A stretch of 64,000 nucleotides of DNA from the NCBI RefSeq assembly GCF_022045235.1, contig NW_027266341.1, positions 2,604,001 through 2,668,000 of the forward strand, read 5' to 3'. The position numbers were made by a program, and so were the translations under genes. Below the pieces are notes generated by a model. The model ran no database searches and had not been told where the DNA came from. It saw only the letters and a program-made list of their open reading frames with translations. The stretch's first letter is position 1. Each line of letters starts with the position of its first letter. This document shows, piece by piece, positions 3,031 to 52,879 of the stretch. The DNA comes from Haliotis cracherodii. Taxonomy: Eukaryota.

Positions 3031-3361
3031 TTATGCAATCTTGCCCAATTCACTATATTCACTAATCATATCACGTGATGTGCTGTCAAGTGTTTCATAC
3101 GTCTGTGGTTCTGTTGGCTCGGATATATCTCGATCTGTCATTTCAGCAACTTCAGCAGCTGCCCCACCCTCCAGATCTGGCTTCTCTGTGGTAAGTGTGC
3201 AATATGTCTCTCCTGGTCCCTGGATTTCACGCGACATGACGCTGAGGCCATCGTATGTTCGGTCTTCAAGTTCAGTTTCGTCGTTGTTTCGTGATTGTTT
3301 TGTTTGAACCTTTGACAGATGACTTTTGAGATCATGTGAATGAGATTCCTGCAGTTATGAT
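3031..3361 (-). CDS. Gene 1 last exon: cytoplasmic tail with YDGL, YCTL, YETL and YSEL, preceded by an in-frame TAA
   Basis: Acceptor tattttcag|A TCA TAA CTG CAG GAA... is in the same frame as ORF 3031..3237. Homologous to the gene 2 tail. Confidence 0.75.
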
Positions 3362-6300
3362 CTGAAAATAGGGATATATGAAACATCAGGAATAAAATCT
3401 TTACGTTACTTCATGGCTCTAAAAACCAATCCATATGATGAGTAGCAAATAGTTTTATTACATTACTTGCTATGTTTTTTGAAAAACATGATATCATCAC
3501 GTGTACTGGAAGTGTAATCAATTGTTCAATTTGATTGGGCCAGAGATTAAGTACCTTTGTCTCCTTCTCCAGCAAACAACACCGACGGCAGCCCCTGCTG
3601 CTACCAAGATAACAATTGCTGTCACTGCATGTATAAGTATTTCCTCACCCCCGACTGGGTTGTTTTGCTGAGGTGAAGATGCTGGAAAAAAAGTTATACT
3701 TGTTATGTGGTGATGACAAATTGGTCAATGGAAACTAATATACTGTGTTATCACACATTTGAATATGATCACTTTTGCAGATACTATTTTTTCTTTTGAT
3801 TGAAGATCAATCATATCTGTCACAACACTTATATTCTTAATGCCTGTCTTATATTCAATCTCTTTGTGAACGGTTGCAGCAGGTAATCCCTTCTTGAAGA
3901 CACCTTCCGAACCTTCTGACGCATTTCAATCATCACATTTAGAAGATCAATTAAGTTTGTATTCAGCGTCGATGTTTTGAACGTGGATGTGTGAAAAGTA
4001 TTTGTGATGAGCCAAATAGTTTCAGCGGGTTGAAAGAGCGAATTCACTATTAAAGATCATGTACCCAAACCATAATTGTCACCATTATACTTACACCACT
4101 CCACAGAGACGCAATACAACAACGAAGGCAGATACCCGGAAAGCTTAATTCAAACTGACATCCCCAGTGAAAATGACGCGACCTTTGTAATGTATGTATG
4201 ACGCCATGAAGGTCTACAGATGGAAAACCTAGCATTTTGACAAGATGGACATGACGTGAAAGTACGTGAAAGAGTATCGCCAAAAGCCATGCCATGTTGA
4301 TGTTACTTAATTTTGCAATACACTCTCAATATTGAGATATATTGACACACTTGCTGTAAATAATGTGTGAACTGGACTATTTAGCAACGTTGATGAAAAT
4401 AAGATCAGTATTTGAAGTCATGAAACGGACGGGTTTGCGTAAGAGGTGAATCTAAATAAATATCCATTTTTATCAGTATTTCGATCAACATAGAAAACAC
4501 TACTGTCCGGTCAGAATACGTCATTATAAAATGTCAAGGTAGAATATTGTGGAAGCCCTTTTACTTGTTGTTTTATTGCAATTTAGAGGTCCCGTGGAAA
4601 AGAAATTTTAGCTAGTAACATATATGTTCCCTTCTGTTTTACTCCAAGATTTACGTGTATCACATCCACTGTACCTCCATACCAGTTGGCACCCCGGCAC
4701 GGTGACGTTACATCGCGACATGCACGGGTCGTTCTAGCTTCAGAATCTACTCATTGCCAGTAAATCTAAAGAAATATGTTCTGTTCCAAAATTTGCAAAG
4801 CGCTTTGAACAGCATGGTTGAGAGACTAAGGATCACTGTCATACAGACTCCAACTTTCATTTCGTTCATAGTACATGAACGTTACAGTTGATTGACAGAA
4901 TAAAACTTGACTCATGTTTTCAAGAATCTAGGTTTACGTATAATATGTATATAAATACATTTCAAATGTACCGTGAAGTGATTGCTAAGCTGCTTACTTT
5001 ATAACGTTCTATAATGCATTATTTCAGCAATGAACACAAACAATGGTTGTTATTGTAATAGCCAGATTTACCAATACATCATAAAACCAAGATACGCTCA
5101 CCCTAAACTGAAGATACCTAATACGTGTGTTTATGAACCTGACAGTTGGTACCTGCAATCTGTGATGCTGACCTTTACGCCGGGGTCGCATGTATCCTTC
5201 AACACAGCCAGAGAAACACTCACCTGAACATTTGTTACACATCCTCGATGCTTGAGAATATGTATGGTCATCATGGCTATCCAAAAATATGTCCTTATTA
5301 AAGCAAAGGTGTTTGTACCTGTACAGTCCGCCCCTGTCCACCCTGTCTCACACCAGGTGTCACAGCGCCCTGTTGAGTTACAGGAAGAGTTCCCCTCACA
5401 GTGTCTGGAGGCACAGGTCTTGATACAATCAGGCCCGTAGTGCTGGCTGTCACAGGCTAATAACATAAAAGCAAATCACTTGTTCAACAATCAGGAGATA
5501 AATACTTCATTTTGTGTGATGTGATGTGGCTGTTCCAAGTGCCTCTTTACTATCTGAAATATGTTTCAAGTAGCACAATACAAGTTTGTTATATACCTGT
5601 AGATTCAGGTTGTGTCCGACCTGCCTTACATCCACATAGTGTACTGTTGTGTTACAGGATGGGTTCCCATACAATGTCTGGAGATACAGGTCTTGATACA
5701 ATTATCTCCGTAATGTTGACTGTGTACTATCGATATGCACTGCATTCATCACTACAGACCGACTCCTCTTGGAATTGGCTTACAGAATCATACCTGTACA
5801 GTCGTCCAGTGTCCACCCTGTCTGACATCCCCTGTCACAATGCCCAGTTGTGTTACAGGAAGAGTGTCCCACACAGTGTCTGGAGGCACATGTCTTGACA
5901 CAGTTTGTCCCATAACGATGAGGTTCACAAGCTGCAACATGAACAAATATGAACACAATCATTATTTTGAATTGACATCTTTATTTTTTTTATTAAAATT
6001 AAATAATGCACTAATTGATTGACAGTTTCTCTCAGTACATAGCAAGCTGCAATTCTGTCCATACATGTAGGTCCCAGGGTAACAGTCTGTAAAATTAAAG
6101 TGATATCGTCATATGTGCAAAGTTGGATCTTGATTGACCTAAGATGTACATCCCGAAGGTGACGTGTGTGCATATGTACACAAACTACACGTTCATCTTT
6201 CTGTACACAGTAATCTACGTGACAATGCAACGTTTAAACATGTGTATCTGTCTATTTATACAGAAGAGTGATGATGGTGTACCTTGTTTACAGTCCACCC

Positions 6301-8419
6301 TTGTCCACCCAGGAAGACATCCAGTGTCACATGACCCTGTATGCCGGTCACATGACGACGGAGCAGCAGCACATTTTCCACATGTCTCGTTACAGTTGAC
6401 GCCATAACGGTCCTTATCACACGCTAGAAATGAAAGGTGTGTTGATCAGAATCATTCGGAACATGAGGTAAATGGTTATCATTATACATTTATTATTAAG
6501 ACATAGGTATTCAAGTTTACATCATTTTTTTCATACAAGAAATATATTCATATTACAGCAATAATGTTGTTAGTTCCTTACCAGTAGAACAGTTTTGTCC
6601 TTGCCACCCTGGTCTACAGTCACCAGCACAGATCCCACTGAATCTGTCACAGGGCCTGTCAGAACAATGGCAGAAATGGTTGCAAAGTTCGCCAAAGGTT
6701 CCGTGACTGCAGACTAAAAACAGCATTGGCGTTGTTCATGTCTCTGCCTTAAACATTTGGTAGTTAAGAAATAAGAACTGTACGTTGACGTTTATTGTTG
6801 AAATTGCAGATGTTATTATGAATGTAAAGAGATCTGAAAGTCATAGATGTTTTCAATTTGATGAAACACATAAACCCTAGAATGCCGCTGACCATAATCA
6901 GGATGAATTATGCACAGTGAGCTGTGGAATATTGATCCAACTGACGACTCCTGGCATCAGGGCATCAAGAGCTTGAATACTAGTAATTCAAAGATCTTAT
7001 GCGTGTTACAAGTATTAGTCTATTTATGTAACATGGGTTCTTTCTACGAAGGAACAATGTCTATAGCAACACATCACAGATGGGCAAACGAAACTCAAAA
7101 TATCCTGTTGCATAACACTGCCTCCTGATTAAACAGTCATGGTGGAATGGCATATCTGATTCAAAGATAGATCAACAAAACAAACAAATGTTTATCAATA
7201 CCAAATATTTCCACCTCACACAGATTTAGTGTCTCTGTGCTGTGTGTGATGGTGAAGTATCTCCCTGTGCCGTCACACGTCACGTCGTATACGCTGTTGT
7301 CTGTTTCAGCTGTGTCAGAGGGGAAGGTGTAGCAGGTGACGCCGGGTGTGGAGCTGCTAGAGTTACTCAGGGAGAGGACGGCGGTTTGGAGTCTGTCAAT
7401 AGCTGAAATGGTGATCATTATAAGGCGACAAAAAATCATAAAACATATCTGATAAAAGTCGTTTGTGCGATTCCGACTATATCATAAGCATGTATGTAAG
7501 ACATAGTTGTCCCCTTTTAAGAAATTATGGTCTCAAATTATATATCCTGTGTATGATATGTTAATAAAAACTATGTGCCTTTCATATCTCATCAAAACTA
7601 GCAAAGTTTTTGTGATGATTTGAGTGATGGAGCATTTACATCAAACGAACACACACCAAGCATTTGTGAAAACTGTGATAGCATATTGTTGATACTATGT
7701 CTTGCATCCAGTTTACGTAGAATTCAGGAACGCCATAGCTTTGTGCGTAAATATAAATGGTCAATGCAAGAGAATAACCAGTTTAGATTACTGCTTAACA
7801 GATTCAATTTGGCGGAAAGGGCAAAATAACTGTATAAATAATGATTATATCAATGGAGCGCTGAAAATACGTGGTGACACTAAATGTTCAAAATGCATCG
7901 TACTCTGGTTCTTCCATTCCACAGAGGAGATTCTGAATCATCAATAAGAATATAGTAATTCTTTGAGGCAAATATTAAGGGAGACAGTTATTGTTTGACA
8001 AATGTGAATTCAAAGGGGAACTGGAACTGCAACCTGTAAATTTCGGGGTATTGTGTTCTTATTCCGTTTGACTTTAGTTATGAATAATGAAAATATGACA
8101 AGCGAGGGGACACAATATCCATGTAGGTGCTAATATTCAAATATACGCCCACTAACTAGGTTCCTATCAGAGTCTTCAGGATGGTGCAGAGTAATTCCCT
8201 GAAATGGAATAGTTCGTTAGCCTGTTTTAGGTAAGGTACTAACATATTAAAGGAATAACAAGCTGGTCGAATATTTCAGGTAATCCTTTTCCACAGGTAA
8301 TCCAGACATAATATTAAGACGGCGCCCGAAGTACAATGCATAAAGATGCCCTAAAAAGTCACTTTCTTGACTTTATTGATAAAGATTAGAGTTAAAATTA
8401 CCAACAAGGTTGTGTATAT

Positions 8420-8468
<49 letters not shown>

Positions 8469-11400
8469 CGTGCGTGTATATATTTTTTTCTGCTAAACAA
8501 ATATGACACCGTATACGCTAACTAAAGACACCATAACTAATAATATGTAGTAATTGTTGAAAATGATATTGACAAAAATACCAAATACGAAGTAGTCGCT
8601 TTATCATGCCATGAAGATGATCGAAATATTTGCAAACCAAACACCCACTCACCCAATTACCACATATGAAATCTACATTTGCTAAGATATCCTGATGCAG
8701 GTGTTATGAAATAGAGTATCTTCGTTGCATCTTGCATATATGGGTCTGGAGTTCTGTTCTGTAAATATGTTTACCTAAATATACATGTCAGTAAATGAAA
8801 CCTCTCTACAGTCCAAATATATCACATACATACATCCTGCCCGGTGGTTATTTTTGATCAGCATGAACTAACATGTTTTGTGACGCTTCCACCAATATCC
8901 CAAGAAATCAAATAACATTGTCCGAACTGATACATACAATACAATCGATTGTATATCCTGACGTCGTGTATCCTGTACGGCTGTCCCAGGTCCACGGTCC
9001 ACACACTCGGAGTCCGTTTAGCGTGGAAGCAGGAGAAGTGCAAATAATCCTGGTCCTGGTTCCCATCTACAACCTTGTCTGCAGACCACGAAGGTAAATA
9101 GAGTCCAGAAGGAGTTGTCGCTGATTTTCCTTTCGCAATGTTTTCTGTTTGGATATATATTTTCAAAGACATGTCACACAAAGACTTGACCTGACCAGAA
9201 TGGTTTATATTGTTCAGTAGGAGATGAATCTTTCTAGTGAGGCCCATGTTATGCATGATAAAGACAATGTTTATTCGGTTTGCCTGAGCTGATGTCTCGT
9301 TTTAATAATTTTGGACATATAACTATGATTAAAAGTGATCTTCATAGAAACGAATGTGACATGTCCCCATTTTGTGCGAGAAGCAGGATTTACGTATGCA
9401 AAGTTTCAACATTTAAATGTTTAAACGACCTAATATGAGGGAAAGTAAATGCTGAAACTTCGATGGAATTTGATCTTGATAGGTCCTGTAGGACAGCATG
9501 AAATATTCAGTTTCAAATTTTCTGGAATACGGAATTCTGTGATGACCCTCCGAACGTTATTGGATGGATTATAAAGATATATAACTACAGGTAACTTACT
9601 AAATGGTTCCGTAATGGGTAGGTGTGTCACAGTGAGTGAGTGAGTATGGTTTTACACCGATTATAGCAATGTTCAAGCAATATCACGACGGGGGACACCA
9701 GAAACGGTCTTCACAAATTGTACCCAATGCGGGATTCGACCCCGGGGCTTCGACGTGATGAGCGAACGCTTTAACCACAAGGCTACTCCGCCTCCCGGAT
9801 GTGTCACAATCTGATTGGATGCATCAATAGGATTCAAAGCCTGGGAATCTTCTCGACTTTCTATTGGTGCGAAATTTTAAATTGCGTTTGGCATTAATCA
9901 TAGAATTTCTTTGATTAAAAGTCAAACAAACGTCTTGGAGAGTGTATACAGCATTCTGTTAACCTTGAAGCTTCAGTTGTCATTCTCTGAATCTTAACTT
10001 CATCATAACGTCATGGCATACCAGGGTGACGACATGTATGTCTCACAGCTATTGGAGTACCAGTCGAAAGAGAACATTATGGAAATCAACGATAACTTTT
10101 ATATTTGCCGTGTTGATAAACATTATGTGCTTTCATATTTTAGGTGTCATTGAGGATCCAATGCACAGCAGTTGGAACATTTAAAACCTACTTTCATTAA
10201 AAAGTCTCAGGGAGCCATTATACTAACAAATGTAAATATATAACGTCAACTCCAGAGGCTAGCCTCGATCCTCCACCTGGCGCAAAAGGCAACACATCGG
10301 TGACAACTACACGAACGGATCGCTGAAAATTAGTGATGACACCAGGAGTTCAGGAAAAAGTGAAATCATGTCCTGCTCTACTCGTAGCACCTGCCACTCA
10401 AACAATTTGCATAAAATGTAAGTAAACTCACCAGAATCAAATATATTCTAGCTCATCTGAATCAAAACAGATTCTTTTCAATATTGGAAATGTCATTATC
10501 CATGTCTTGTGTTTATTGTGCATCACACGCAACGTTGATAATTCCACCTTATCGACTGAAAAGTAAATCTACCATATTAGTGTAATATGTCACCATAAGA
10601 GTACATGCAGTTATAAATGTCATGACGCAGAAATATGTATTGCGAAATTATGAAAGACAGTCAACTCTGAAATGAAATAGTCAGATATCAACAATTTAGC
10701 CAATTTTGGAGATTAGGTTGAATCAGTCATATTTCAATATGTATTATATTCATATTCATACTAACCGAAGAAGGCTGTTATTATATTCGTGTACGTGATA
10801 GTGAGTGAGCGAGTAATAATGATGTTGCGCCGCTTTAAGAAGTATTCATTCTCACAATTAGGGGGACCTCATAAATGGGTTTCAGACATTGCACTTACCC
10901 GGGCCTTCAACGTTACGGGCCAACATTGTACCAACAACAGGCAATCCGACTGCCGTCAATATATTTATGCCTAAACACAGCTAAAGTAATAAAGTTTGGG
11001 GATTAACGTCGCATGTAAGATTATTGCACTTATACAATAACGTGTATGCACGTGCGTGTGTGTCTGATTGTACTATTCCGGACAAATGCCGATTTTATAG
11101 TGCTGGCCCAATGAGATACAATGTCGGCAGTTTAACATACCTTAATTCAGACACAGTATACTAACTCCGAGCCGACCAGTTCTTGTTTTAGCCCCTTAAT
11201 GACCAGCACCAGACAGGGGGACAACAAGTACCATCTTTTAACGTCTTTTGGTATGACGAGGACGGGGATCCAACTCCGCACCTTTCGCTCTCCGGGCGGA
11301 GGCTCTACCATTAAATCACGGAGGCGGTACTAATGAAGCAGAATGTTTTAAAATAGGTATTGTAAGTATGTGGCTGGTCATAGAGAATAAGGGCACTTTC

Positions 11401-14400
11401 TGTTTTTGTTTCCAAATCAATTTCATTTTAAATCACACCTTTCTGGCAGTTAGATCCATTTCCTCCCATCCAACCAGACTCACAGCCACCTCCACAAACT
11501 CCTGTTGTCTGGTCACAGGAGTCTCCACAGTGACAGGAGTAGAAGCAGGAGTCTCCGAACTTTCCTGTTGGACAGGAGCCTGTAAAACATACTCAGTGGT
11601 GAAATACATCAAATATTGACAGCAGCAGATGCATACATTTGCAATGAAATTCACAAATATCTTCCAATCAGCACTTGAATAGAGAATTTAAAACTATCTG
11701 CATTACAACCATGCACACACTCGCAGGCAGGCACACATATTCTCTAAAAAAAGGAAACGCAAAGCCAGATTAGTATGAGGTACGAGGAACCGTACAAGGT
11801 ATTGAGCCACAATATTATGGAGAGAACACTTGGTGATTGTAGTCATCTCAGTTATCGGTACATAGAAAAAGTCCAAGGTTAAGGTCGGCTACCATCAATA
11901 ACTCATTTTAACTTAATTCAACGATTTTATAGCGATATTGAAATAGTCCGCCCATGGGCGAGTAAAAGGTTTGGCCAATGGGCAAGAATATTTTCCATTA
12001 CACAAAACTTATGTGTTTGTTTCGCAAATATATTTTAATGCATTCCTTCACGTATCATGACACAAAATTTAACTCATTTTAACTTAATTCAACGATTTTA
12101 TAGCGATATTGAAATATTTCGCCCATGGGAGAGAAAAAGGCTTGGCCAATTGACCTGCCCATGGGCGAAGTTTGGCCCATGGGCAAGAATATTTTCCTTT
12201 ACTCAAAACTCATGTTTTTGTTTCGCAAACATTTAACTTGTATTCCATCAAGTATCATACACAAAATTTAACTCATTTTAACTTAATTCAACGATTTTAT
12301 AGCGATATTGAAATAGTTCGCCCATGGGCGAGAAAAAGGTTTGGCACATGGGCGAGAATATTTTCCATTACACAAAACTTATGTGTTTGTTTCGCAAATA
12401 TATTTAAATGCATTTCTTCACATATCATGACACAAAATTTAACTCATTTTAACTTAATTCAACGATTTTAGAGCGATATTGAAATATTTCGCCCATGGGC
12501 GAGAAAAAGGCTTGGCCCATGGGCGAGCATATTTTCCTTTGCTCAACAGTTTTAGTTTCGCAAATACATTAAGGGATTATAAGCATGACACATGATTCAA
12601 CTCATTTTAATTTAATTTAACTAATTTTTGGCGTTATAATATTTCGCCCATGTTTTCGTCAGTCCCTTTAAAGAATTAACTAATTGTTTACAAAGTATAT
12701 TGTATCATGAGCAACACACTTTGTATTATATCATTACATTACTATTTTAAAAGGGCCTTTGGTTGGATGTTTCCTTTGCAGAAGTTTTACAAATTTCCCC
12801 TTTTTTACATATTGCAACGATCTTTAATGAACCCGGCCTTATCTCTCAAAACGTTTTGACAGTTTATCATACAAATTCACGCGCGTGTACACCAATTCAT
12901 TGGCGTTATTTTTCAACGAAAATTAAAGTTTAGTTTGTTTCTTTTTCACTTCCCATTTTATGTCTCGTAAATACATCACACTGGGAAATTAAGTGACAAT
13001 AGATATGCAATATACAGGTACACGTTCGCGTTTTTTAATGGGAAAAAAACCGATTCGTCTTTCATTGCATAACGTCTAGCTGAATATCTCACATTCTAAC
13101 GAAATAGTTTTATGACCACGTGCCTCGGCACAAGCATGGTGCTGGAAGACAAGTTATACATGTACATCCCATATAGTGACTGATTTTCGCTATTGATACT
13201 CTAGATTCATTCATAATACCACAACATTTAAGTACTCCTTGAAACTTTACAATCACTTCAATATATACAATAGATTAAACGAGAACAAATGATATATTGC
13301 AGATTATTAACTCATTGTCTCTTTTATCAGCTGCTACGTTTGTATCGTTTGCATTGTACAAAGAAATATTGTGTCTGTCCTTTTGCAGATTTAGCCCCAA
13401 AATGTGCTCATTCGAATTAGGAACGAAAATAATTGCTTATCATGAGTATATATGATACAGTTAAAAGTTACTTATACACTGTAGATGTATTCACTTTAAA
13501 GTCGTATTGGCGAGCGAGTTATATGATCCAGGTTAATTGGAACGAAGTCTAGAAAGGATTATAAAGTTTTGTATTTGGTAATGTGTAGGTTTGTTAAATA
13601 TGATTTTTTAAAAATTCCTTTTATTCAAAATGTAAAACAAATAATTATGCGTTGAAAAATAGAGCTGACTTGATGCGAGATGTGGCGTTAGCCACCTGAG
13701 ATTGTCTGGTGGACACGGTTTAACCTTACTGTGCCCTCACCCTGGTTGTTGTTGTCGTTGTTATAAGGGATTGGGAGCTACAGCTCATTGCATTTTTGGT
13801 TACAGTCTGTCTCACTAAAGTGGACATGTGCAGGTGAACTCTGTTCAATTAGTATATGAAATGCCCCAATATATGAACTCAAGACAATAATAACCTGAGA
13901 GTAAATCAACGTGCGTCTGCCTTTCCCCTCGTTCACCTGAAATTCAGTGACAATGTTGCTGAACAGTTGAATCTGATGGACGTATTGTGCATAACCTGTT
14001 TGACACTATTGGTTCCAGGACCACTAACACTGGGAAGAGTGGCACTCTGAGCTGAAAAAAGTTTGGTCCTAACCACCCCAACATCTACAAGTTTGTAAGC
14101 TTTTTGATATCTTTAAGAAGAAATTAACAGTCCCATGCTGAGACCTTTCTAAAAAATTCAGGCCGGTGGCAGGCTGCCAACAAAGAGAAGAAAATATCGC
14201 AACCTCGACACAAGTGTGCTCTGTCAAACGATGAACTTACGACCGGTGTCCCGGTATAAACTCTCCCCCGTACAAATTCTCCCCCCGGAAAGTTTATACC
14301 GGTACAGATTCTCCCCCGGAGAATCTGTTCTGAAATAAAATCACCCCCGGGCGGATATATTTCGCGCCCCCCTCAGTATAAAGTCTCCCCCCTGATTATT

Positions 14401-31482: not shown

Positions 31483-31795
31483 TCACTTAACCTTCCCGAT
31501 CTCACTGTATTCACCATCAGTTCCCCGTGACGTGTTGTCAAGGGTTTCATAGGTCCCTGCTGCGATAGAGTCGGACACGTCACATGACGTCAGAACAGTG
31601 GCATCAGTTTTTGCATTTGTTTGGCCAGATTTAACGGTGCAGTAAGGCTCTCCTTTCATCTTGGCGTCATATGAGACGGCATTGAGACTGTCGTATGGCC
31701 TAGTTTCTGGGCCAACGTCATCACTGGCCTGCGGTGGTTCAGTTGGAACGAGTGATACAGTGGTTGGGCGCGATTCAGATGTCTTGTGTAGGCAT
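31483..31795 (-). CDS. Gene 2 cytoplasmic tail exon (YDSL, YCTV, YETL, YSEI)
   Basis: Acceptor cacattccag|A TGC CTA; lies within ORF 31483..31812. Confidence 0.85.
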
Positions 31796-37700: not shown

Positions 37701-40700
37701 ATTTGCTTTGGATCACGACGATGCATTCTATTTTATTTTTGATCCTGTGTACCCAAACAGTTCCCATACAGCTATCGATTTTGATTTAGATTATCATCTT
37801 AAATGTCCTGAGGACATAAGTTGGTAATGATAAAGAAGAGTGTCCAGTTGAAATCAGATACGTTGAGGACAGAAAGTGAGGGTTTCTCAACAAACAGCTC
37901 CCCACTCCCCAGCCGACCAACCAATGTTCACCCAAAGCCAAACAGAACATGACCCGTCTCCACCCAAGAATAGCAAATGGTCGGCCCCAGGAAACGGGTA
38001 AAACAAATTGTTTTGTCCACACTTGTGCATACATAATAAAAATATAATGTGACGACTTTTCTTCAGGTAAACATTTGTTTTAAATTTAAGAAATGAAGTG
38101 GCTTTTTTATTGAACCTACTTATATAAATTCTCACGATTCTCCAGAGGAAATATGTACGTGCTACAGTGTGTTAATTCACAAAGCATCTTTTGGGGAGAA
38201 TATGCGTTACACCACACGATGAATATCATTTCTGTGTTCAAAGAAACAGCAGATGATCAAAGTTTTAAAAAGTGTATGTCATTTTAGAAAATATGGAAAA
38301 ATGTACTATTGAAGCAGAGAAAATACAAATATTCAATTCACGATTGAAACAGTAAACCACTTCATGAAATGAATGTGTTGTGTACTGATTCACCCGCACA
38401 CCAAAGTAAGTAAGAAATATGTACAATGGTGTTGATGTTGACAGTTGGTTTTTCCTTGATGCAGGGATTGCATCAAGCATACACGAGTCATGTAAGTTAA
38501 ATAATCAGAATCAATCTGCGCCATTTGTTTTTATATTACCGTTGATACTAAGTAGAAAGGAAGAGAAGTACCGTTACAAATAAAACTATGAGACGTATAA
38601 CCTAGAGAATGCAAATGACAATTTTTAAAATTTGTCACAGGGTTATCCTACGTACTTCCCTTTCATTGGCCCTATTTTGAGTGGTGACACTTAGGCAAGC
38701 GAAAAGCAGAAGTTACCGACGTAAATCGGAGTAGCCATTTTTTGTTTGAAATTAACGTGTACATATGCTATCAACAATTATCCGTACCATAAATTTCCAC
38801 CTCACACAGATTTAGCCGTATGCTGTGTGTGATGGTGAAGTATCTCCCTGTGCCGTCACACGTCACGTCGTACACGCTGTTGTTTGTTTTGACTGTGTCA
38901 TTGGGGAAGGTGTAGCAGGTGACGCCGGGTGTGAAGCTGCTGGAGTTACTCAGGGAGAGGACAGCAGTTCTAATTAATTGAATATCTAAAACAGGCAATG
39001 AAAGAAATGATATGCTGACTGACGGTGACATTGTGCTCTTGAACAATGACAAATAGCTAGCAAATGACACTTTGTGTGATCCAGTTCACCTGTCATCTTA
39101 TTGCTGAAACATGTGTGAACGTCAAATAAGACCATGTGACCACATTCAGTTTAAATGTGTAGGAAACATTAATTTGTAAGTCGTTTTTGATCAGCATGTG
39201 TGGCAGAGTGATATTTTGTACATAAAAGTTAGGTTTTAATTCTATTTTAGCCATAGCTTTATACACATTCTATTTCAGATTTGGATTAAGTAAATAGTTT
39301 ATTTACTATGCCTTACTTTTGTCATATAATTGTATTTCAGCTTAAACATTAATACCATAGCTTATCTGTTCATTCAGTCTATTATTTATCAAGCAATTAC
39401 TAACCATACAACTGCATGCTTTTCACCCACAGCACTTAGTATCCCACCCAACGTTTAGACTACTCTATTGTTCTCTGTGGTCACTCACAGCTGACCACAG
39501 GTACATGTATACCTTTGTACTCTTGTGATCTGGGGCAGTTGCCAGATTACACATGAAGCATATACATCAGTCATTATGTGTATAGTCCTGGATGGATCTC
39601 GTGTTTAGAATTATATTCATGGATCCAATGGATGTGTTAATTTCATGGATTTTAAGGTTTGTTGTGGTATATTTCTTGTGTGATGCTTTTTTATGTATTT
39701 GTGTATTCTAATTTTTAAAGTTAGAGCTAGTTTATTGCTAGTCAGGTTATGTATTGAATTCACAGTTCAGTGTATTATGGTTATGATAATTTTATATGAT
39801 AACGTATTATAAAGCAGTTTCTTTAATTGATAAATAGCTAATTTAGCCTGGGCTATTATCATCGTACTTGAACATGAACTAAGTAAAACTAAACCCTAAA
39901 TAAACTATACCTCATATCACATTAAGGTAATTGTGCTAATTATGTATAAGAAAGTATGCATATGTGTGAAAGTGCATTATTTAAGTTATTTGATAAATCT
40001 CTGTTTTAAATACCTATTTTACTTTTGTGTTGTGTATAGTGATAGTGTAAATAGTATCTGCATTACTTTATACTTTGTCAATGCAGATGTAACTGGCATT
40101 ATTTTAGAAGCCTTGGTGTCATGGCATAGGTTTCACCAATCTGGTAAGTATTGTTTATGTGTTATTCATGAATGTATAAATGTATGTATCTATATATATG
40201 CTGACGTTGTATATCTTTGTAATTATCACGTAGTCATGTACTTGTCTAATGTTATGACAGTAGACAGGGTTTATGTTTAGTTTACATTGATTATAGCATC
40301 ATAAGCATATATATTACTGTATCATTGTGCAGGTTACTTACTACATGAGTAACATAGGTTTCTCGCTATTTTAAGTTCATATAATTGAATGTCCATTAGA
40401 TGTAAGGCCCTTATCTATATCATAACAATGTCAATGTTCTATATCTTTTGTGCAGTATGTCTTAATATGTATACATTGTTTCAGGCCGTATTTTTCGCCT
40501 CTCACATTTGTCTTCTGAGAGAATAAAAAAAATCAGCTCATTCCCTGTAGCCGTTTGCGGTGTGAAACCGTCTCGACAAATAAGTGCTACTATACATGTA
40601 CTAACATGTTTTGGGACGCCTCATCATAATATCCAAATAAATCAAATAACGCTGTCTAAACTGATACATACATCCTGCCCTGTTGTATATCCTGACGTCA

Positions 40701-43700
40701 TGTATCCTGTACTGCTGGCCAAGGTCCACTGTCCACACAGGTTTAGGGTCCTGATACGCAGAGTGAAAACAGGAGTTGTGGAGCACATCCTGGTCCCGGT
40801 TCCCATCTACAACTTTGTCTGCAGTCCAGCCGTGCCTTGCGTAATCAGTTGGGGACGAGGTTGCTGTCTGGTTGTAGGCAATGTTCCCTTACACGAAAAT
40901 AAGTACGAAGATAAATTACTTTTAAAATTGAAATTTATTATATGTGAAAAGTAAGGGTTTTAACTTCCAAGGAATATGATCTTGGTGGATCCAACAGATC
41001 GTATTTTCAAAGATATGTCATACAAGTACCAGGCCTTCACCAGAACTGGTTGTATTGTCCGGAAGGTGCCTTTTTCTATTGTAGAAAAACTGCTCTGCAT
41101 AAAAAGCAATGTTTACCTATGTCTTATACAAGTTTACATAATTTTGGCATATATTTATTTGAGAGGGCTAACTTCATAGAAAAGAATATTTCCATGAGAA
41201 AGAGAAAACTACGGGAAATCAGCAATTACTTTTTGTATTTACTATGTCCATAAACATGATGTATTTTTCGATTGGTATTGAGTATTGATGCACAGCATAT
41301 TCAACATTGAAGCCCCATCGTCATTTGATAACCTAATCAGGGGGACATCAAAATAACAGATATAAAACAAACCAGGACAAAATTCAATCTAGCTTATCGA
41401 AAATGGCATTGTGATCACTTTCAAATCGTACCCTTATAGGTACCACATACATGTATGCGATGTCGGCAACATGCTGTAATTGTTATTACCCCACTCAGAC
41501 ATAGTATAATGTCTCCGAAACGACTAGTGAATGTTTTTGCCGCTTGATACCGAACGTCAGACAGGTGTTACAACAAGTAGAAGTCTCGTGGTATGACGAG
41601 GACGGTGATCGAAATCCTGACATAACGCTCTCCTGGCGGATGCTGTACCAAAAGACAACAGAGGCGGTCCTTGAAAATATGTAAACTGCTTGGTTCCTGA
41701 ACATGATTGCCTCACCAGTGTCATGTGACGTAAACCACATTTAGACGATCTTGTTGATGAAGCCAGTGAAGTGGCGCTGGAGAGGCTTGTTCGAAAATAG
41801 TCGGAAAGATGAAATAGTAAAGATGCATAGTTGGTCTTAAATAATGCAAGATACGAAAATATACGGAAGTTACGTTTGTAAAAGGGCTATCCAAGTTTTG
41901 ACTAAACTTAGTATCTTATAAATGGTATTTCCATGCTCAATATACGAATCATGTGCAAGAATGTTATGCAGAGTGTCTGGTTGATTATGTTTGGATCTCT
42001 GTATTCTCTATTGATTTTGTGTGAGGCAATATATCGTCCGGAAGACTAAGTTTGGTTTTAAAAGTATGTGAGATAGCAATAGCGGATACTCGGTACTGCT
42101 CTACTTTTATGTGGAGTGCAAGAATCATGTTTGTTTGCCATTTGCGACGGTACTTCTAGACACCGGTGCCGTAAAAATACCACAATGTATGGGTGGTATC
42201 CAGAGCCATGTTCCACAAAGCGATCGTAGCGCTACGACAGTCGTAAGTCTATGTTAAAGTTTGGGAGTTACGATCACCTCACCACTACAATCGCTTTGTG
42301 GAACTGGGCCCATTATCTGTAGATTGGATTGTTCATCATTCGGGACTGATTCAGAAGGGGTGATGGTCTTATAACGCCAGCAGTTCGTTAGGTATCGTCT
42401 TTCAAATCTAACCTTGTGACAGTAACACCCACCTTTCTGACAGGTTTGCCCATTCCCACCAAACCATCCAGGATCACATGCACCGTTACAGACTCCAGTT
42501 GTCTGGTTACAGGGCTGAGTACAGTGACAGGAGTAGCTACAGGTGTCTCCGAACTTTCCTATCGGGCAGCTGGTACCTGTAAAATGTAGAACAAAGGTTA
42601 ATGTTCATGCAATGCTCTCCAAGCCCCATTACCCATAAACACATGTTCAAATGTAAGCATGGCTCAGTCACAAACTTCTTACAGCCAGATAGGATGGTCG
42701 GGTGGTTAAAGCGTTCGCTCGTTACACCGAAGACCCGGGTTCGATTCCCGACAATTGATTTACGTATGTTTCACACAACTGAAGAGATTGAAAGTGATCA
42801 CATTATTAATTAATCTTTCAGATTTACCTGGGTCCAAGATAGAGCTGACATCTTTAGATATAATTTGACAACAGATGAAGTATCTTATTTACTGGAAAGG
42901 GCAGTAAGTACAGCAGTACATACAGCATTCGTTAGCAGAAAGAAATATGGTCACGTTTCTTAGCAGTAAAATTTGATAGTTAATGTGTTGTATGTATCAG
43001 AATGTAAAGGTTTGTGCGCGAAATAACGGTATTGTGTCTGACACATTTGAAAGCGAAATTGGCGTTAAGCATGGATACATTTTAAGTCCGTTTTTGTTCA
43101 CCTTCTTTAACAATGAATTTGCTCAACAAATTCAGCAGAACTGTTCTGATGGCATCCAACTTCACCCGGAAACTATAGAGTTATTTCTTCTTTTGTTTGC
43201 CGATGATATAATAATTTATTTATTGTCATGGAAGTTGCATGCTCACACAGCTGCAGTACAAGCTAAGAAGATCCTAATTGGAATTCTTCAACATATGAAA
43301 GTTCTTGGAAGTATATCCTATAATACATTCTTTAAGATTTTCGATATAAAAATAAGCCCAATTTTGTTATATATAGCAGAGGTTTGGGGATTAGAAATGA
43401 CTGATGTTATGGAAAAGGTACATTTATATGCATGCAAAAGATTGGTGTGAAACTTAGAACGTCTAATCTAATGGTTTATGGAGAATGTGGACAATACCCA
43501 TTAATTATATTTGCAAAGTTAAAGACGATAAAATACTAGATTAAATAAGTTAAAATGGCTCAACAAGATATCGAAAGAAATGTTATAGCATGTTATAACA
43601 GAGTTGAAGTTGTGAGAGAAGTTGGGAATTGGGCATGTCGTCACAATGTTGTCGAGGTGTCTATGAGTAATACATGTATATGCGTTGCAGTAAGCTAAGC

Positions 43701-43923
43701 TGTGTTAACCTTGCATGCATGTTTGTCCAGCGTTACTGTAAATAACGCAAGTTTTTGTTGTTGATATCAGTATAAATTAATAATATTTTCAAAGGATTAT
43801 TTTACAAAGTATCATGTTCGCTGCCCACAAGAAAGAAACCTGTAGTTATTACCTACCCAGCATGAGTTGTATCCACCACCCTGACACAGCCGCAGTAAGT
43901 ATCAGCCACCTCACACCCGCCAT
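31483..43923 (-). CDS. Gene 2: F-type lectin/EGF-repeat single-pass receptor with intact tyrosine-motif tail (about 541 aa)
   Basis: Exons 43923-43857, 42576-42433, 40887-40672, 38985-38788, 37276-37145, 35204-35061, 34226-34083, 33793-33656, 32097-31968, 31795-31483 total 1626 nt with an open frame throughout. Confidence 0.85.
31968..32097 (-). CDS. Gene 2 transmembrane exon
   Basis: EDARCVQAAGYNLSQLAVAVVLAFVAGAVVGAIVSAVIWRRRNR. Confidence 0.88.
33656..33793 (-). CDS. Gene 2 EGF-like exon
   Basis: ACDINHYGANCDKTCASRHCVGNSSCASTGDCDRGCDTGWAQADCT. Confidence 0.85.
34083..34226 (-). CDS. Gene 2 EGF-like exon
   Basis: ACSTGSYGQSCGNYCTDRKCAGDSPCDHVRGTCVSGCAPGWMSEDCRE. Confidence 0.85.
35061..35204 (-). 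CDS. Gene 2 EGF-like exon (duplicate of 34083-34226)
   Basis: ACSSGSYGQKCSNACTDRKCAGDSPCDHVRGTCVAGCEPGWMGEDCRE. Confidence 0.85.
36727..37207 (-). repeat. 74-bp tandem array of an EGF exon 3' half plus splice donor, about 6.5 copies
   Basis: CTCCTCACCTGTAT at 36767, 36841, 36915, 36989, 37063 and 37137. Confidence 0.95.
37145..37276 (-). CDS. Gene 2 EGF-like exon following the lectin domain
   Basis: VCSPGVFGDSCNQSCHCFQATCDPVSGVCPGDCRPGWQGDRCDT|gtgagg. Confidence 0.88.
38788..38985 (-). CDS. Gene 2 F-type lectin domain, C-terminal exon
   Basis: YIQLIRTAVLSLSNSSSFTPGVTCYTFP...VTCDGTGRYFTITHSIRLNLCEVEIY. Confidence 0.9.
40672..40887 (-). CDS. Gene 2 F-type lectin domain, N-terminal exon
   Basis: NIAYNQTATSSPTDYARHGWTADKVVDGNRDQDVLHNSCFHSAYQDPKPVWTVDLGQQYRIHDVRIYNRAG; the acceptor is a weak AAG. 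Confidence 0.85.
42203..42311. mobile_element. Small hairpin MITE (Harbinger-like GGGCC ends)
   Basis: GTTCCACAAAGCGATCGTAG pairs with CTACAATCGCTTTGTGGAAC as an inverted repeat. Confidence 0.7.
42433..42576 (-). CDS. Gene 2 N-terminal EGF-like exon
   Basis: GTSCPIGKFGDTCSYSCHCTQPCNQTTGVCNGACDPGWFGGNGQTCQK. Confidence 0.88.
42900..43620 (+). pseudogene. Decayed non-LTR retrotransposon reverse transcriptase fragment
   Basis: GVKHGYILSPFLF and LLLFADD motifs in ORF 42983..43450, with internal deletions. Confidence 0.85.
43857..43923 (-). CDS. Leader exon C (proximal signal-peptide exon of gene 2)
   Basis: MAGVRWLILTAAVSGWWIQLML G|gtaggt; 67 nt. Confidence 0.78.
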
Positions 43924-47775: not shown

Positions 47776-47928
47776 ATGATCAAGAACTTATGGACACCAA
47801 AGTCCTGGCTGACTTGGTCGAGGAGCTAAAGCATCTTTCAAGTCAACAAAGAGAAGCATTGCAGACTATGATCATTGATCACGTTGGCTGCTTTCCAGAT
47901 GCCCCTGATACTGCCAACAGCATAGTGT

Positions 47929-48105
47929 AAGTGAGTGAGTGAGTATGGTTCTACGCCGCTTTTAGCAATATTCCAGCAATATCACGGTGGGGGAACACCA
48001 GAAATAGGCTTTACACATTGTACCCATGTCGGGAATCGAACCCGGGTCTTCGGTGTGACGAGCGAATGCTTGAACCACTAGGCTATCGGGACAACAGCCC
48101 CCCAC
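47929..48105 (-). mobile_element. tRNA-derived SINE with (CTCA)n tail, inserted in a second Gypsy fragment
   Basis: Same family as 9632-9797. The left flank encodes LKHLSSQQREAL..FPDAP, a Gypsy pre-RT segment. Confidence 0.85.
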
Positions 48106-48963
48106 CCTGGTACATTTACAGTTGTAAAATTAGTGATGCAGTTCCGACAGATCAGAGACATACGTGTCTCACTACACATACGTGATTCATGATGTATACT
48201 TATTATATTGTCCACCCATGTCACAAAAACTGGATTGATCATTGCTATTATTCAGGACAACGTAGCTGATCATAAATAATATATATATTTTATAATACCT
48301 CCACTAAAACAGAAGCTTTAGCAAATACACCCCACAATCATCCCGTTCAAATTTCAGTGAAGAAAACAGCAATTGCACTTCTTGGTCCTCCCTCTAATTT
48401 CAGCTTAACAGCTCCACCTTTTGTTAATCAAGAAAACAGTTGGAGATTAAAAGGGTATTTAGGTGAAATTAGTCGTTTCATAACCTTTACATGAATTTCA
48501 CCCCACTGCAATAATGTTCTCAGAACAAGAGGAGAACAAGAATACCAGCAGCTACATGCTTCTTTTAACATTGTGATATTTCCACAAAATGTATAATTTC
48601 GTTGTGCCCTACTTGAAACGTATTGCCCCAGGTATTAATTGAGTTATAATACAAACGTACCACATTTGTGTACCACAAAATGTAGACTTTTCAAGGCCGA
48701 CATCATCCTATTTACGAACTTGCAATTGCTCCACGTTAACAGGGCCTCAGTAAGGTAACCTGCCAGAACATCCACGAAGTGCAGCAAGCTACGTCTATAG
48801 TTACTAAATGATATATGGTATATCAAACTTGTTATAAAATACAAATGATTAGATGTTTAAAATGTTACCCTATCTATAGTTAAATGCTTCCTTATTTGGA
48901 TTTCGATACCATTAGGTATTAGTAACTCTACTTGAAAGAGTAACTCGTCCCGTGACTACTTAC

Positions 48964-49030
48964 CCAGAGTGTGGTGTATCCAACAACCTGACACAGCCGC
49001 CATGAAAACCAACCACCCTTCTCCCGCTAT
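48964..49030 (-). pseudogene. Leader exon B, start codon mutated from ATG to ATA
   Basis: (I)AGEGWLVFMAAVSGCWIHHTL G|gtaagt; 67 nt, paralogous to leader C; internal ATG at 49003. Confidence 0.65.
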
Positions 49031-50363
49031 GTTGACTAACCAGGAAGTAAAGCTCGCACGTATGTTAGAGTAGGCGTGAATGGAAAGTTCCTATTGACAT
49101 GTACAGGAAAGTAGTGTTCATGTCGTACATTTGTTACCAAGAGGATATAGTTTACATGTAAATGCTGGTGCGCTCGCCTTCATTACAAATCCATCTGAAA
49201 ATACCACCAACACTTTCATGATAACTAGGCTGGAATTGAAACATAATTATAATTTTGCCCAGCTTTTCAATAAAGATTTCATCAAGGAAGACTTGGTTAA
49301 GTCATTCAAGGAATGTTAAGGTAGACAATAAGAGGAATTTACTGAAGATGACACGGAGCTTCATAACATGATACGTAAATCTATCCAATACTTTGAGTTT
49401 TCATATTTTACACACTGACACTTGTAAAATTAGGTTGGTTGATCTTGTGGCCAGGCTAAGTGACTTGTATGATCGCGTGATGTTGTATTCCGACGCGTGG
49501 AAGATTGGTCACAATGGCAATCACTAAGTTGTCTGGTCAAGACTCGATTGTTTGCAGGGTGCCGCCATACGGTTGAAGTATTGCCAAGTGTTACTTCAGG
49601 CAACTAGCAGACAAAAGTATGCTTTCAGGACAAAGTGTGTGAATGGTGGGTGCTATCCATAGACCAGGAGATGTTTACCCTTTTCGCGAACAGGTGTTAT
49701 CACACATTTTTCGTCACTAATGATGGGCAGTTAAAGTTGCATGAATCAGGTACATATTCGCTGAAAGGAACCTGGTCAAATGAGGTGAGGTGTGGTGAGG
49801 TGAATGTTAACGTCACGTTCAAGATTATTTCACTCATAAATGAAGTGCATGAATTAGTCCGGACTTATGTCTTGATAGTGCAATCTCATTTAGATACCAT
49901 GCAGCACTTTGTAAGTTTGACTCACACATTGTAGAACCTCCGAGTCGGGCAGTCCTTACTTTACCCCTAACACTGAGCCCCAGACAGCGAAACAGCAAGT
50001 GTAATCTTTTAATGTCTTTGGTATGACACAACTCGGGAATCGAACCATCGACCCCTTCCCCTCTTCAGACACAGAGGCGGTTTGGTCAACAGATGGTAGT
50101 AATCAAATTATATTACATGCATTTTGTCTTAGCCTTTGCTATAAGACATCGTTATTGATTCACTGCAAACCATCATCTTCTACAACTTTACTCCCCTTTA
50201 AGCAAGCCATTAACTGTAATACCGTCGTGCTCAGTGTTGTTTACAATGATTGTCTTTGCTAAAACTCTCGTGCAAGAATAATGCAAAATGAGGTAGTGAC
50301 ATTACAGTAATCGACCTAAAGATACAATGTATATCAAATAAGGAGGCATGATGTGTCACTCAC

Positions 50364-50430
50364 CAATTATAACCTGTATCCAGAAAGCCGATGTGACCAC
50401 GGTGACAGTCAGTATCCACACACCCGACAT
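50364..50430 (-). CDS. Leader exon A (distal; duplicate of the gene 1 leader)
   Basis: MSGVWILTVTVVTSAFWIQVII G|gtgagt; 67 nt. Confidence 0.65.
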
Positions 50431-52861: not shown

Positions 52862-52879
52862 CTACACTAAGCCTTAGAG

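What the first reader, a model, noticed from the sequence alone, without database searches (positions are those of the whole stretch)
3031..50430. Tandem cluster of diversifying F-type-lectin/EGF receptors with ITAM-like tails: candidate molluscan variable glycan-recognition receptor family
Seen: two paralogs with identical exon architecture (SP, EGF, FTP, EGF x4, TM, four-Tyr tail), invisible to the ORF track because the exons are short. Established: FTP domains bind fucosylated glycans, and MEGF10/Draper-type EGF receptors signal through YxxL pairs to Syk/Shark kinases. Inference: fusing these gives a signalling lectin receptor. Variable binding loops, a tailless paralog, alternative leaders and exon turnover together resemble a paired, polymorphic innate-immune or allorecognition receptor cluster.
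Basis: partly seen in the sequence, partly recalled or inferred. Interest (0 to 1): 0.9.

Follow-up and report, generated by a model that had tools for sequence, protein, structure and literature searches.

The report
Abalone lectin-EGF receptors, ITAM-like tails
Two neighbouring black-abalone genes encode membrane receptors with a fucose-lectin-type head, an EGF stalk and a tyrosine-motif tail (one cut off by a stop codon); they belong to a mollusc receptor family already annotated and recently linked to parasite resistance in snails.

Summary
The window (Haliotis cracherodii, contig C78) carries two minus-strand genes. Gene A spans 3034-22740 and gene B spans 31483-50430. Each has a 67-nt leader exon, an EGF exon, an F-type lectin domain split over two exons, four 8-Cys EGF exons, a TM exon and a tail exon.

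Spliced RNA contigs join the lectin, EGF, TM and tail exons at GT-AG sites. These contigs come from close paralogues or orthologues, not from gene A itself.

Gene B's tail has four Yxx[LIV] motifs. The C-terminal pair, YETL-x10-YSEI, is conserved across Haliotis species and in Gigantopelta.

Gene A has an in-frame TAA two codons after the TM junction. The two upstream tandem copies share it, and RefSeq models tail-less products in two species.

Lectin loops next to the sugar-binding residues are hypervariable (pN/pS 0.87 against 0.13 for the framework). Positive selection is not shown.

Sister genes carry a tyrosine-phosphatase domain instead of the tail, and their lectin heads are interleaved with the tailed ones on a tree.

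The family is not new. RefSeq names it MEGF10/draper-like, and Biomphalaria papers from 2025 and 2026 describe fucolectin-EGF receptors with and without PTP domains at schistosome-resistance loci. This scan also met the family on two other pieces of this genome (s1-836061, s1-820426).

Polymorphism, haemocyte expression, glycan binding and Syk signalling remain untested.

The parts
22674..22740 (-). Gene A leader exon (ATG at 22740; 67 nt; donor GTGAGT, phase 1)
   Evidence: 86% identical to the leader region of paralogue product P0172.
11439..11579 (-). Gene A EGF1 exon (8-Cys EGF, phase 1-1)
8938..9144 (-). Gene A F-type lectin exon 1. It holds CDR1-3, the His52 equivalent (CFH) and the Arg79 equivalent (YNR).
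   Evidence: (PF22633, E = 1.4e-8). In one search the joint lies near 8945/8949, with other letters in between.
7202..7402 (-). Gene A F-type lectin exon 2
   Evidence: One search shows joints 6713|7202 and 7402|8945.
6582..6713 (-). Gene A EGF2 exon
   Evidence: One search shows joints 6423|6582 and 6713|7202.
6283..6423 (-). Gene A EGF3 exon
   Evidence: One search shows joints 5931|6283 and 6423|6582.
5794..5931 (-). Gene A EGF4 exon
   Evidence: One search shows joints 5456|5794 and 5931|6283.
5590..5740 (-). Dead EGF exon copy in gene A (stop and frameshift), skipped by the spliced contigs
   Evidence: The joint 5456|5794 skips it.
5319..5456 (-). Gene A EGF5 exon
   Evidence: One search shows joints 3681|5319 and 5456|5794.
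3555..3681 (-). Gene A TM exon (...AVTAIVILVAAGAAVGVVCWRRRQ, donor phase 2)
   Evidence: One search shows joints 3361|3555 and 3681|5319.
3355..3361 (-). Start of gene A's last exon. It reads AG|A TCA TAA, giving R-S-stop, with the TAA at 3357-3355.
   Evidence: Z1 and Z2 share the TAA; neighbour Y reads TCG at this codon.
3034..3354 (-). Gene A residual tail frame: 107 open codons with YDGL, YCTL and YETL-x10-YSEL. It lies behind the stop and is probably 3' UTR.
50364..50430 (-). Gene B leader L1 (67 nt). It is the first coding exon of RefSeq model P0166.
48964..49035 (-). Leader-like exon L2. ATG has become ATA at 49030-49028. P0166 uses it as an internal 72-nt exon; in H. rufescens it is the start of isoform P0167.
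43857..43923 (-). Leader-like exon L3 (intact ATG, 67 nt, donor GTAGGT). It is 95.7% identical to the leader of PTP-type receptor P0177.
42433..42576 (-). Gene B EGF1 exon
40672..40887 (-). Gene B F-type lectin exon 1
38788..38985 (-). Gene B F-type lectin exon 2
37145..37276 (-). Gene B EGF2 exon. It is intact, but RefSeq model P0166 leaves it out.
36726..37207 (.). 74-bp tandem array (6.5 copies, 96% identical) that repeats the 3' half of EGF2 together with its splice donor
35061..35204 (-). Gene B EGF3 exon
34818..34943 (-). Remnant of a type-5 EGF exon in gene B
34083..34226 (-). Gene B EGF4 exon, a duplicate of EGF3 (80% aa identity)
33656..33793 (-). Gene B EGF5 exon
31968..32097 (-). 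Gene B TM exon
31483..31795 (-). Gene B tail exon, coding part, with YDSL, YCTV and YETL-x10-YSEI. The frame stays open across the junction.

Best explanation
Genes A and B are two members of a mollusc-wide family of type I membrane receptors that has expanded in Haliotis. The ectodomain is one 8-Cys EGF, one F-type lectin domain and a stalk of 8-Cys (MEGF/laminin-type) EGF repeats.

Gene B encodes the full receptor (RefSeq P0166, 'protein draper-like'). Its roughly 105-residue tail carries four Yxx[LIV] motifs and ends in an ITAM-like pair, YETL-x10-YSEI.

Gene A belongs to a sub-clade with the two upstream tandem copies Z1 and Z2. In this sub-clade a shared TAA two codons after the TM-tail junction removes the tail, leaving a membrane-anchored receptor with a 6-residue cytoplasmic stub.

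Shown here: the exon structure, the splicing of the lectin, EGF, TM and tail exons in close paralogues or orthologues, the lectin fold, the loop hypervariability, the conservation of the tail motif, the shared stop codon, and the existence of sister genes with a PTP domain.

Inferred: the lectin head binds a glycan, possibly fucosylated, through a pocket whose rim varies between paralogues. Clustering then lets a Src-family kinase phosphorylate the tyrosine pair, which recruits a tandem-SH2 kinase of the Syk/Shark type. This is how Draper and the oyster hemITAM C-type lectin receptors signal. Tail-less forms would bind ligand without signalling, acting as decoys or modulators. PTP-tailed forms would oppose the signal.
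For: Architecture and phases.

Splicing: one search shows GT-AG joints 3361|3555, 3681|5319, 5456|5794, 5931|6283, 6423|6582, 6713|7202 and about 7402|8945 in three RNA-like runs from two species labels, and none in the DNA run.

Lectin domain: PF22633 scores 49.7 bits against a cut-off of 27.8. Sequence matches to solved structures are FBP32 3cqo at 7e-13 and AAA 1k12 at 1.8e-8. The predicted fold hits 1k12, lectinolysin and SpX with target-normalised TM-scores of 0.76-0.81. The His52 and Arg79 equivalents are kept in both genes.

Loop variability: CDR1-3 give pN/pS 0.87, with 19 of 54 pairs above 1. The framework gives 0.13, with none above 1.

Tail: the four motifs align between the A-type and B-type tails, which are only 36% identical. 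The C-terminal YxxL/I-x8-13-YxxL/I pair is kept in H. cracherodii, rufescens, rubra and asinina and in Gigantopelta.

Stop codon. Tail-less RefSeq models exist in two species: P0270 and P0271 in H. cracherodii and P0272 in H. rufescens.

Family size: at least 120 lectin-exon matches and 9 tails of this type in the genome, all on C78 in two clusters.

PTP sisters. Heads of the two types are interleaved on the tree, which needs 6 switches against a shuffled mean of 7.2.

Precedents from papers: Draper's ITAM (PMC6219719, title and abstract only); oyster CgCLec-TM1/HTM hemITAM-Syk signalling (review PMC13027682); Biomphalaria fucolectin-EGF receptors with and without PTP at resistance loci (PMC12297450 and PMC13712769).
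Against: No ligand, expression site or phosphorylation was tested.

The third basic residue of the fucose triad (Arg86 of AAA) is displaced. It is an R/K at +6 from the Arg79 equivalent in most paralogues. In gene B that position is Leu, with an Arg at +8. The vicinal Cys82-Cys83 disulfide is absent. Some paralogues have lost the His and the first Arg altogether. Fucose binding is therefore uncertain.

The first tyrosine pair is 13 residues apart, outside the usual ITAM spacing.

Loop pN/pS below 1 fits relaxed constraint as well as diversifying selection. The loop borders were partly chosen after seeing the variation.

The A versus Z1 ectodomain pN/pS is about 0.7, which is compatible with decay.

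The RNA contigs carry paralogue letters, so transcription of gene A itself is not shown.

P0166 leaves out EGF2 and strings two leaders together, so the true gene B transcript is uncertain.
Confidence: 0.6

Rival explanations
1. The genes are MEGF10/SCARF-type engulfment or adhesion receptors for housekeeping tasks such as corpse clearance and cell contact. The lectin-like domain would be a structural or protein-binding module, and the cluster would reflect ordinary birth-and-death of genes rather than immune diversification.
For: The 8-Cys EGF stalk, single TM and YxxL tail resemble Draper, MEGF10 and SCARF. RefSeq and InterPro-based papers file such genes there (PMC13712769). The fucose triad is incomplete and is lost in some paralogues.
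Against: There is no EMI domain and no NPxY motif. Variation is concentrated in the loops around the sugar-binding residues while the framework is strongly constrained. Comparable gene clusters map to parasite-resistance loci in Biomphalaria.
Confidence: 0.2
2. Gene A, with Z1 and Z2, is a decaying pseudogene lineage. The nonsense codon would be a loss-of-function lesion and the tail-less product would have no role.
For: There is an in-frame TAA. The Z1 and Z2 tails are further broken by insertions. The A versus Z1 ectodomain pN/pS is about 0.7. Transcription of gene A itself is not shown.
Against: About 400 ectodomain and TM codons stay open with canonical splice sites in A, Z1 and Z2. The stop lies in the last exon, so it should not trigger nonsense-mediated decay (established knowledge). 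The same tail-less form is modelled in H. rufescens (P0272), so it has outlived a species split. It has also been duplicated since.
Confidence: 0.3
3. The genes are gamete-recognition receptors. F-type lectin bindins mediate sperm-egg binding in oysters and are highly variable, so these could be reproductive proteins.
For: Variable F-lectin loops are known in oyster bindin (PMC5712786). Abalone reproductive proteins evolve fast (own knowledge).
Against: Bindins are secreted repeats without a TM segment, an EGF stalk or a signalling tail. Nothing here points to gonad expression. Snail counterparts are tied to parasite resistance.
Confidence: 0.05

Closest known systems
Biomphalaria 'scavenger receptor class F-like' single-pass receptors: subgroup 1B (fucolectin/galactose-binding signature) and subgroup 1C (the same plus PTP domains) at LG5R, and the MEGF/GBD receptor-like PTPs of SudRes1 (PMC13712769, 2026; PMC12297450, 2025)
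   Same: Both have an EGF/Tie2-like stalk, a fucolectin-type domain and a single TM, with either a short tail or a PTP cytoplasmic part. Both sit in tandem clusters with gain and loss of genes and exons. Both are proposed to recognise glycans.
   Different: This family is from a different gastropod lineage. I did not retrieve Biomphalaria sequences, so homology rests on shared architecture and on hits in Lymnaea, Bradybaena and Littorina. Those papers do not mention an ITAM-like tail or conserved tail-less forms (0 occurrences of 'ITAM'). No resistance association is known in abalone.
Draper / CED-1 / MEGF10 engulfment receptors
   Same: Both have an 8-Cys EGF stalk, a single TM, and a tail with YxxL/I tyrosines spaced like Draper's ITAM. 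RefSeq names the abalone genes after this family.
   Different: The abalone genes have no EMI domain and no NPxY motif. An F-type lectin domain is inserted after the first EGF. They form a multi-copy, fast-changing family rather than a conserved single gene.
F-type lectins (eel AAA 1k12, striped bass FBP32 3cqo, lectinolysin lectin domain, oyster bindin)
   Same: The fold is the same and the His and first Arg of the sugar triad are kept. Variation sits in the CDR loops, as in eel and oyster isoforms (PMC5712786).
   Different: The abalone proteins are membrane-anchored on an EGF stalk. They have no Cys82-Cys83 disulfide, CDR4 is variable and the third basic residue is displaced.
Syk-coupled lectin receptors (oyster CgCLec-TM1 and CgCLec-HTM, vertebrate Dectin-1)
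   Same: Both have a lectin head and a tyrosine-motif tail on one chain. Mollusc Syk signalling from such tails has been reported (review PMC13027682).
   Different: Those are C-type lectins with a single hemITAM. The abalone genes have an F-type lectin and a double tyrosine pair.
Vertebrate paired receptor families (KIR, Ly49, Siglec, SIRP)
   Same: This is an analogy only. Similar heads are coupled to activating, inhibitory or no signalling parts, in tandem clusters with rapid turnover.
   Different: The folds are unrelated. The inhibitory arm would be a fused PTP domain rather than an ITIM. The tail-less forms have no charged TM residue that could bind an adaptor.

Membership tests
F-type lectin domain (FTLD/FTP) | Profile or sequence match to the family | tested here: met
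   PF22633 scores 49.7 bits against a cut-off of 27.8 for P0166 (gene B). Gene A exon 1 alone scores 35.6 bits. Matches to solved structures: 3cqo at 7e-13 and 1k12 at 1.8e-8.
F-type lectin domain (FTLD/FTP) | Jelly-roll F-type fold | tested here: met
   In the AlphaFold model the lectin part has pLDDT 84-93. The top Foldseek hits are 1k12, 3lek, 2j22 and 3cqo, with target-normalised TM-scores of 0.76-0.81.
F-type lectin domain (FTLD/FTP) | His-Arg-Arg fucose triad (His52, Arg79, Arg86 of AAA) | tested here: inconclusive
   The His and first Arg are kept in A and B. The third basic residue sits at +6 in A and most paralogues. In B that position is Leu, with an Arg at +8. Some paralogues lack the His and first Arg.
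F-type lectin domain (FTLD/FTP) | Vicinal Cys82-Cys83 disulfide that stacks on fucose | tested here: not met
   Aromatic or aliphatic residues take its place: NRLYSIDR in A and NRAGYIQL in B.
F-type lectin domain (FTLD/FTP) | Binding of fucosylated glycans | not testable with these tools
   This needs recombinant protein and a glycan array.
Draper / CED-1 / MEGF10 | Stalk of atypical 8-Cys EGF repeats and a single TM | tested here: met
   The Tie2 EGF region 2gy5 matches at 3.8e-5.
Draper / CED-1 / MEGF10 | N-terminal EMI domain | tested here: not met
   The Pfam scan of P0166, P0172, P0122 and P0156 at E <= 0.01 gave no EMI hit. The N-terminus is a leader followed by one EGF.
Draper / CED-1 / MEGF10 | NPxY motif in the tail | tested here: not met
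   The tails listed contain no NPxY.
ITAM-bearing receptors | YxxL/I-x6-12-YxxL/I in the cytoplasmic part | tested here: met
   Gene B has YETL-x10-YSEI. Gene A's untranslated frame has YETL-x10-YSEL. The pair is kept with spacing 8-13 across the family. The first pair is 13 residues apart.
ITAM-bearing receptors | Tyrosine phosphorylation and binding of a tandem-SH2 kinase | not testable with these tools
   No abalone Syk sequence was fetched and no complex was predicted.
Snail fucolectin-EGF single-pass receptors (Biomphalaria subgroups 1B and 1C) | EGF stalk plus fucolectin signature plus TM, with or without PTP domains, in tandem clusters | tested here: met
   The architecture matches the papers' descriptions. 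PTP sisters were found.
Snail fucolectin-EGF single-pass receptors (Biomphalaria subgroups 1B and 1C) | Sequence homology to the Biomphalaria genes themselves | not tested
   No Biomphalaria protein appeared among the 106 hits. Lymnaea, Bradybaena, Candidula and Littorina did appear.
Paired receptor system | Closely related heads on opposing signalling parts | tested here: met
   The lectin-domain tree needs 6 switches between 8 PTP-type and 22 Tyr-tail receptors, against a shuffled mean of 7.2. Branch support is SH-aLRT 81-100. This holds at family level only, because the window has no PTP gene.
Paired receptor system | Allelic and copy-number polymorphism | not tested
   The single read-laying run used contigs that mix paralogues.

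The most novel reading that the evidence does not exclude
The abalone family is a three-way paired receptor system built on one hypervariable F-lectin head. ITAM-like tailed forms activate, PTP-fused forms inhibit, and a tail-less clade conserved across species (genes A, Z1 and Z2, and P0272 in H. rufescens) tunes the response by competing for ligand. It would be an invertebrate counterpart of the KIR/Ly49/Siglec logic that arose independently, and a candidate for pathogen resistance loci in a threatened species.
Probability: 0.22. Interest if true: 0.8.

Novelty: new member of a known kind. Interest (0 to 1): 0.48.

Why it matters
Black abalone is critically endangered, largely through withering syndrome, so a cluster of variable surface lectin receptors is a reasonable place to look for resistance variation. 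In Biomphalaria, gene clusters of the same build sit under schistosome-resistance peaks.

This window adds two things to that picture. First, it gives a concrete signalling hypothesis: a conserved ITAM-like pair, which the snail papers do not mention. Second, it shows natural tail-less receptors that have been kept across species and then duplicated. Together with the PTP-tailed sisters, these make the idea of paired activating, inhibitory and decoy receptors directly testable.

Tried and rejected
- A third lectin gene or a separate tail-less gene inside the window: tblastn with all exons found only A and B.
- PTP exons downstream of gene A as an alternative 3' end: none in the window or in 80 kb of flank. 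Only leader-like matches to P0177 were found. The PTP genes lie about 35 Mb away.
- Rescue of gene A's tail by another acceptor: CTGCAG|G at 3349 shifts the frame, and a phase-2 AAAAG|T site has no pyrimidine tract. The spliced contigs use 3361.
- Pfam on single EGF exons and on the tail exons: the EGF exons gave only matches below the gathering cut-offs (DSL, laminin EGF), and the tail exon gave none.
- Positive selection: not demonstrated.
- Reading the state of the TAA in transcripts, and polymorphism: read laying listed only the best-supported differences, and its contigs carry paralogue letters.
- The 'ITAM' hit in an abalone speciation paper was the surname Itami.
Its exons were searched one by one by reference, and gene B was studied through its database model P0166.
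- Complex prediction, the protein-atlas search and the RNA-family tools were not used because they had no bearing.


Full report
**What is in the window.** The window is G000:C78:2604001-2668000 of a 1.18-Gb genome. The contig is 61,937,186 bp long, the same length as the contig that carries several Haliotis cracherodii RefSeq proteins. One of these, P0166, maps onto the window at about 100% identity. The genome is therefore black abalone.

Six-frame reading, self-comparison and tblastn of every exon show two minus-strand genes and no third lectin gene.

- Gene A: leader 22674-22740, EGF1 11439-11579, lectin exons 8938-9144 and 7202-7402, four EGF exons (6582-6713, 6283-6423, 5794-5931, 5319-5456), TM exon 3555-3681, and a last exon starting at 3361.
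- Gene B: leader 50364-50430, EGF1 42433-42576, lectin exons 40672-40887 and 38788-38985, EGF exons 37145-37276, 35061-35204, 34083-34226 and 33656-33793, TM exon 31968-32097, and tail 31483-31795.

All ectodomain exons are phase 1-1 with AG/GT borders.

**Splicing.** One read-laying run on 3031-9030 was available. It used three RNA-like contig sets (two from a sister species label, one from the same species label) and one DNA set. GT-AG joints appeared exactly at the predicted borders in all three RNA-like sets and in none of the DNA contigs. The joints were 3361|3555, 3681|5319, 5456|5794, 5931|6283, 6423|6582 and 6713|7202, plus one near 7402|8945.

There is a caveat. The contigs carry a 6-nt insertion and single letters that match the neighbouring paralogues Z1, Z2 and Y rather than gene A. 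Splicing is thus shown for the sub-family, not for gene A itself. RefSeq models from four Haliotis species have the same exon chain.

**The head.** Gene B's product matches Pfam PF22633 above its cut-off. It also matches solved F-type lectins, with FBP32 at 7e-13 and eel agglutinin at 1.8e-8. A model built on a 30-sequence family alignment has pLDDT 84-93 over the lectin part, and its best structural matches are fucose-binding lectins with target-normalised TM-scores of 0.76-0.81.

The alignment to 1k12 places the His52 and Arg79 equivalents in both genes (CFH and YNR). The third basic residue is displaced and the Cys82-Cys83 disulfide is missing (triad as described in PMC5712786). A sugar-binding pocket is likely, but fucose specificity is not assured.

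**Variation.** Across 34 distinct family lectin domains, the entropy peaks fall on the segments that align with CDR1-5 of the eel lectin. The strands are nearly invariant.

Eleven copies of lectin exon 1 from this genome were compared. The CDR1-3 codons give pooled pN/pS 0.87 (median 0.83; 19 of 54 pairs above 1). The framework gives 0.13, with none above 1.

This shows hypervariable loops on a constrained scaffold. It does not show positive selection. The loop borders were partly chosen after seeing the data, and loop alignments contain indels.

**The tail.** Gene B's tail has YDSL, YCTV, YETL and YSEI. Gene A's frame has YDGL, YCTL, YETL and YSEL at aligned positions, although the two tails are only 36% identical.

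The C-terminal pair Y[ED]x[LI]...Yxx[LI], with 8-13 residues between, recurs in all Haliotis sub-families and in Gigantopelta. It fits the ITAM pattern. The tails have no NPxY motif and the proteins have no EMI domain, so these genes are not Draper/MEGF10 orthologues despite their names.

Only nine tails of this type exist in the genome. All are on C78, in the local cluster and in a second cluster at 36.3-37.65 Mb. By contrast, lectin exon 1 has at least 120 matches.

**The tail-less gene.** Gene A's TM exon ends in phase 2. The acceptor used by the spliced contigs reads AG|A TCA TAA, so the protein stops two codons after the junction.

- Gene B reads on at this point.
- The upstream tandem copies Z1 and Z2 read CCA TAA.
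- The next gene, Y, reads CCA TCG and keeps its tail.

RefSeq models the tail-less product for Z1 and Z2 (P0270 and P0271, 483 aa) and for an H. rufescens gene (P0272, 432 aa). All three end in WRRRQRP. The stop therefore predates the split of these species and has since been duplicated.

The Z1 and Z2 tail frames are broken by insertions, as expected for untranslated sequence. Gene A's 107-codon frame is still open and 86% identical to Y's tail. I cannot explain this; gene conversion is one possibility.

The ectodomains of A and Z1 differ with pN/pS of about 0.7, so decay cannot be excluded.

**Leaders and exon turnover.** Three 67-nt leader exons with a shared upstream motif lie before gene B. 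L1 is the start of P0166. L2 has ATA in place of ATG and is used by P0166 as an internal exon. L3 is intact and 95.7% identical to the leader of a PTP-type gene. In H. rufescens, RefSeq isoforms of one gene start with either the L1-type or the L2-type leader (P0161 and P0167).

The EGF sets of A and B differ by independent duplication and loss. Dead copies lie at 5590-5740 and 34818-34943. A 74-bp array repeats the end of gene B's EGF2 exon together with its donor.

**Sister genes with a phosphatase.** Many family members replace the tail with a PF00102 tyrosine-phosphatase domain. One of them, P0177, maps in exon order to C78:37.62-37.65 Mb.

On a tree of lectin domains, 8 PTP-type and 22 tailed receptors need six switches of type, close to the shuffled mean of 7.2. 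Related heads are thus found on both kinds of cytoplasmic part. Branch support is moderate. Gene-model fusion errors are unlikely, given about 20 such models in four species, but cannot be fully ruled out.

**What is known.** Notes from this scan on two other pieces of the same genome (s1-836061, s1-820426) said the family was already described in snails, and I checked this.

- PMC12297450 (2025) reports MEGF/galactose-binding-domain receptor PTPs and related MEGF genes in the SudRes1 schistosome-resistance region of Biomphalaria sudanica. The region has high diversity and gene presence/absence variation.
- PMC13712769 (2026) classifies 'scavenger receptor class F-like' single-pass receptors at the B. 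glabrata LG5R peak into subgroups. These include 1B (fucolectin signature) and 1C (fucolectin plus PTP).

Neither paper mentions an ITAM. Oyster C-type lectin receptors with a hemITAM that signal through Syk give a mollusc precedent for the proposed signalling (PMC13027682).

**Verdict.** The family is a known kind and these are new members. The ITAM-like tail, the conserved tail-less clade and the interleaving with PTP forms are points worth testing.

Noticed in passing
window 51609-55430 (+): A mobile element with long open frames. The last frame (54906-55427) matches the phage-integrase/tyrosine-recombinase family PF00589 at E = 7.8e-7, so it looks like a DIRS- or Crypton-like element. Near-identical short ORFs at 51000-51227 and 55907-56134 may be its terminal repeats.
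   Followed up: partly
window 56444-57848: A 25-bp satellite with 56 copies at 85% identity. It coincides with the GC peak (0.57) and a strong negative GC skew.
   Followed up: no
window 42983-43450 and 46333-47233 (+): Reverse-transcriptase fragments (PF00078) lie between gene B's EGF1 exon and its leaders. The stacked leaders therefore sit in transposon-rich DNA.
   Followed up: partly
window 26275-26829 and 59690-60198 (-): Two copies of a FLYWCH zinc-finger ORF (PF04500, E = 6.9e-6), each with an adjacent ORF. They probably belong to a DNA-transposon family.
   Followed up: partly
window 11900-13000 and 19693-20752: An inverted pair of about 1.1-kb blocks, 90% identical, made of 171-199-bp tandem units. 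They lie inside gene A's 11-kb first intron. Two 113-bp arrays are at 15377-15932 and 21544-22242.
   Followed up: no
G000:C78:2669727-2670373 (window coordinates 65727-66373, outside the window): A B-like TM exon and tail, 97-98% identical to gene B's tail, with a leader-like exon about 7 kb further on. No lectin exon was found there, so it may be a lectin-less or partial copy.
   Followed up: partly
G000:C78:2574300-2603500 (window coordinates about -31400 to -560): Z1 and Z2 are two tandem gene copies about 16.7 kb apart. Several of their exons are 100% identical. They are either a very recent duplication or an assembly duplication of haplotypes.
   Followed up: partly
P0032 and P0151 (H. 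rufescens); G000:C78 window coordinates -62000 to -52700: Some family members carry two lectin-EGF modules in one protein. Neighbour gene Y has two lectin exon sets about 5 kb apart ahead of one TM and tail.
   Followed up: no
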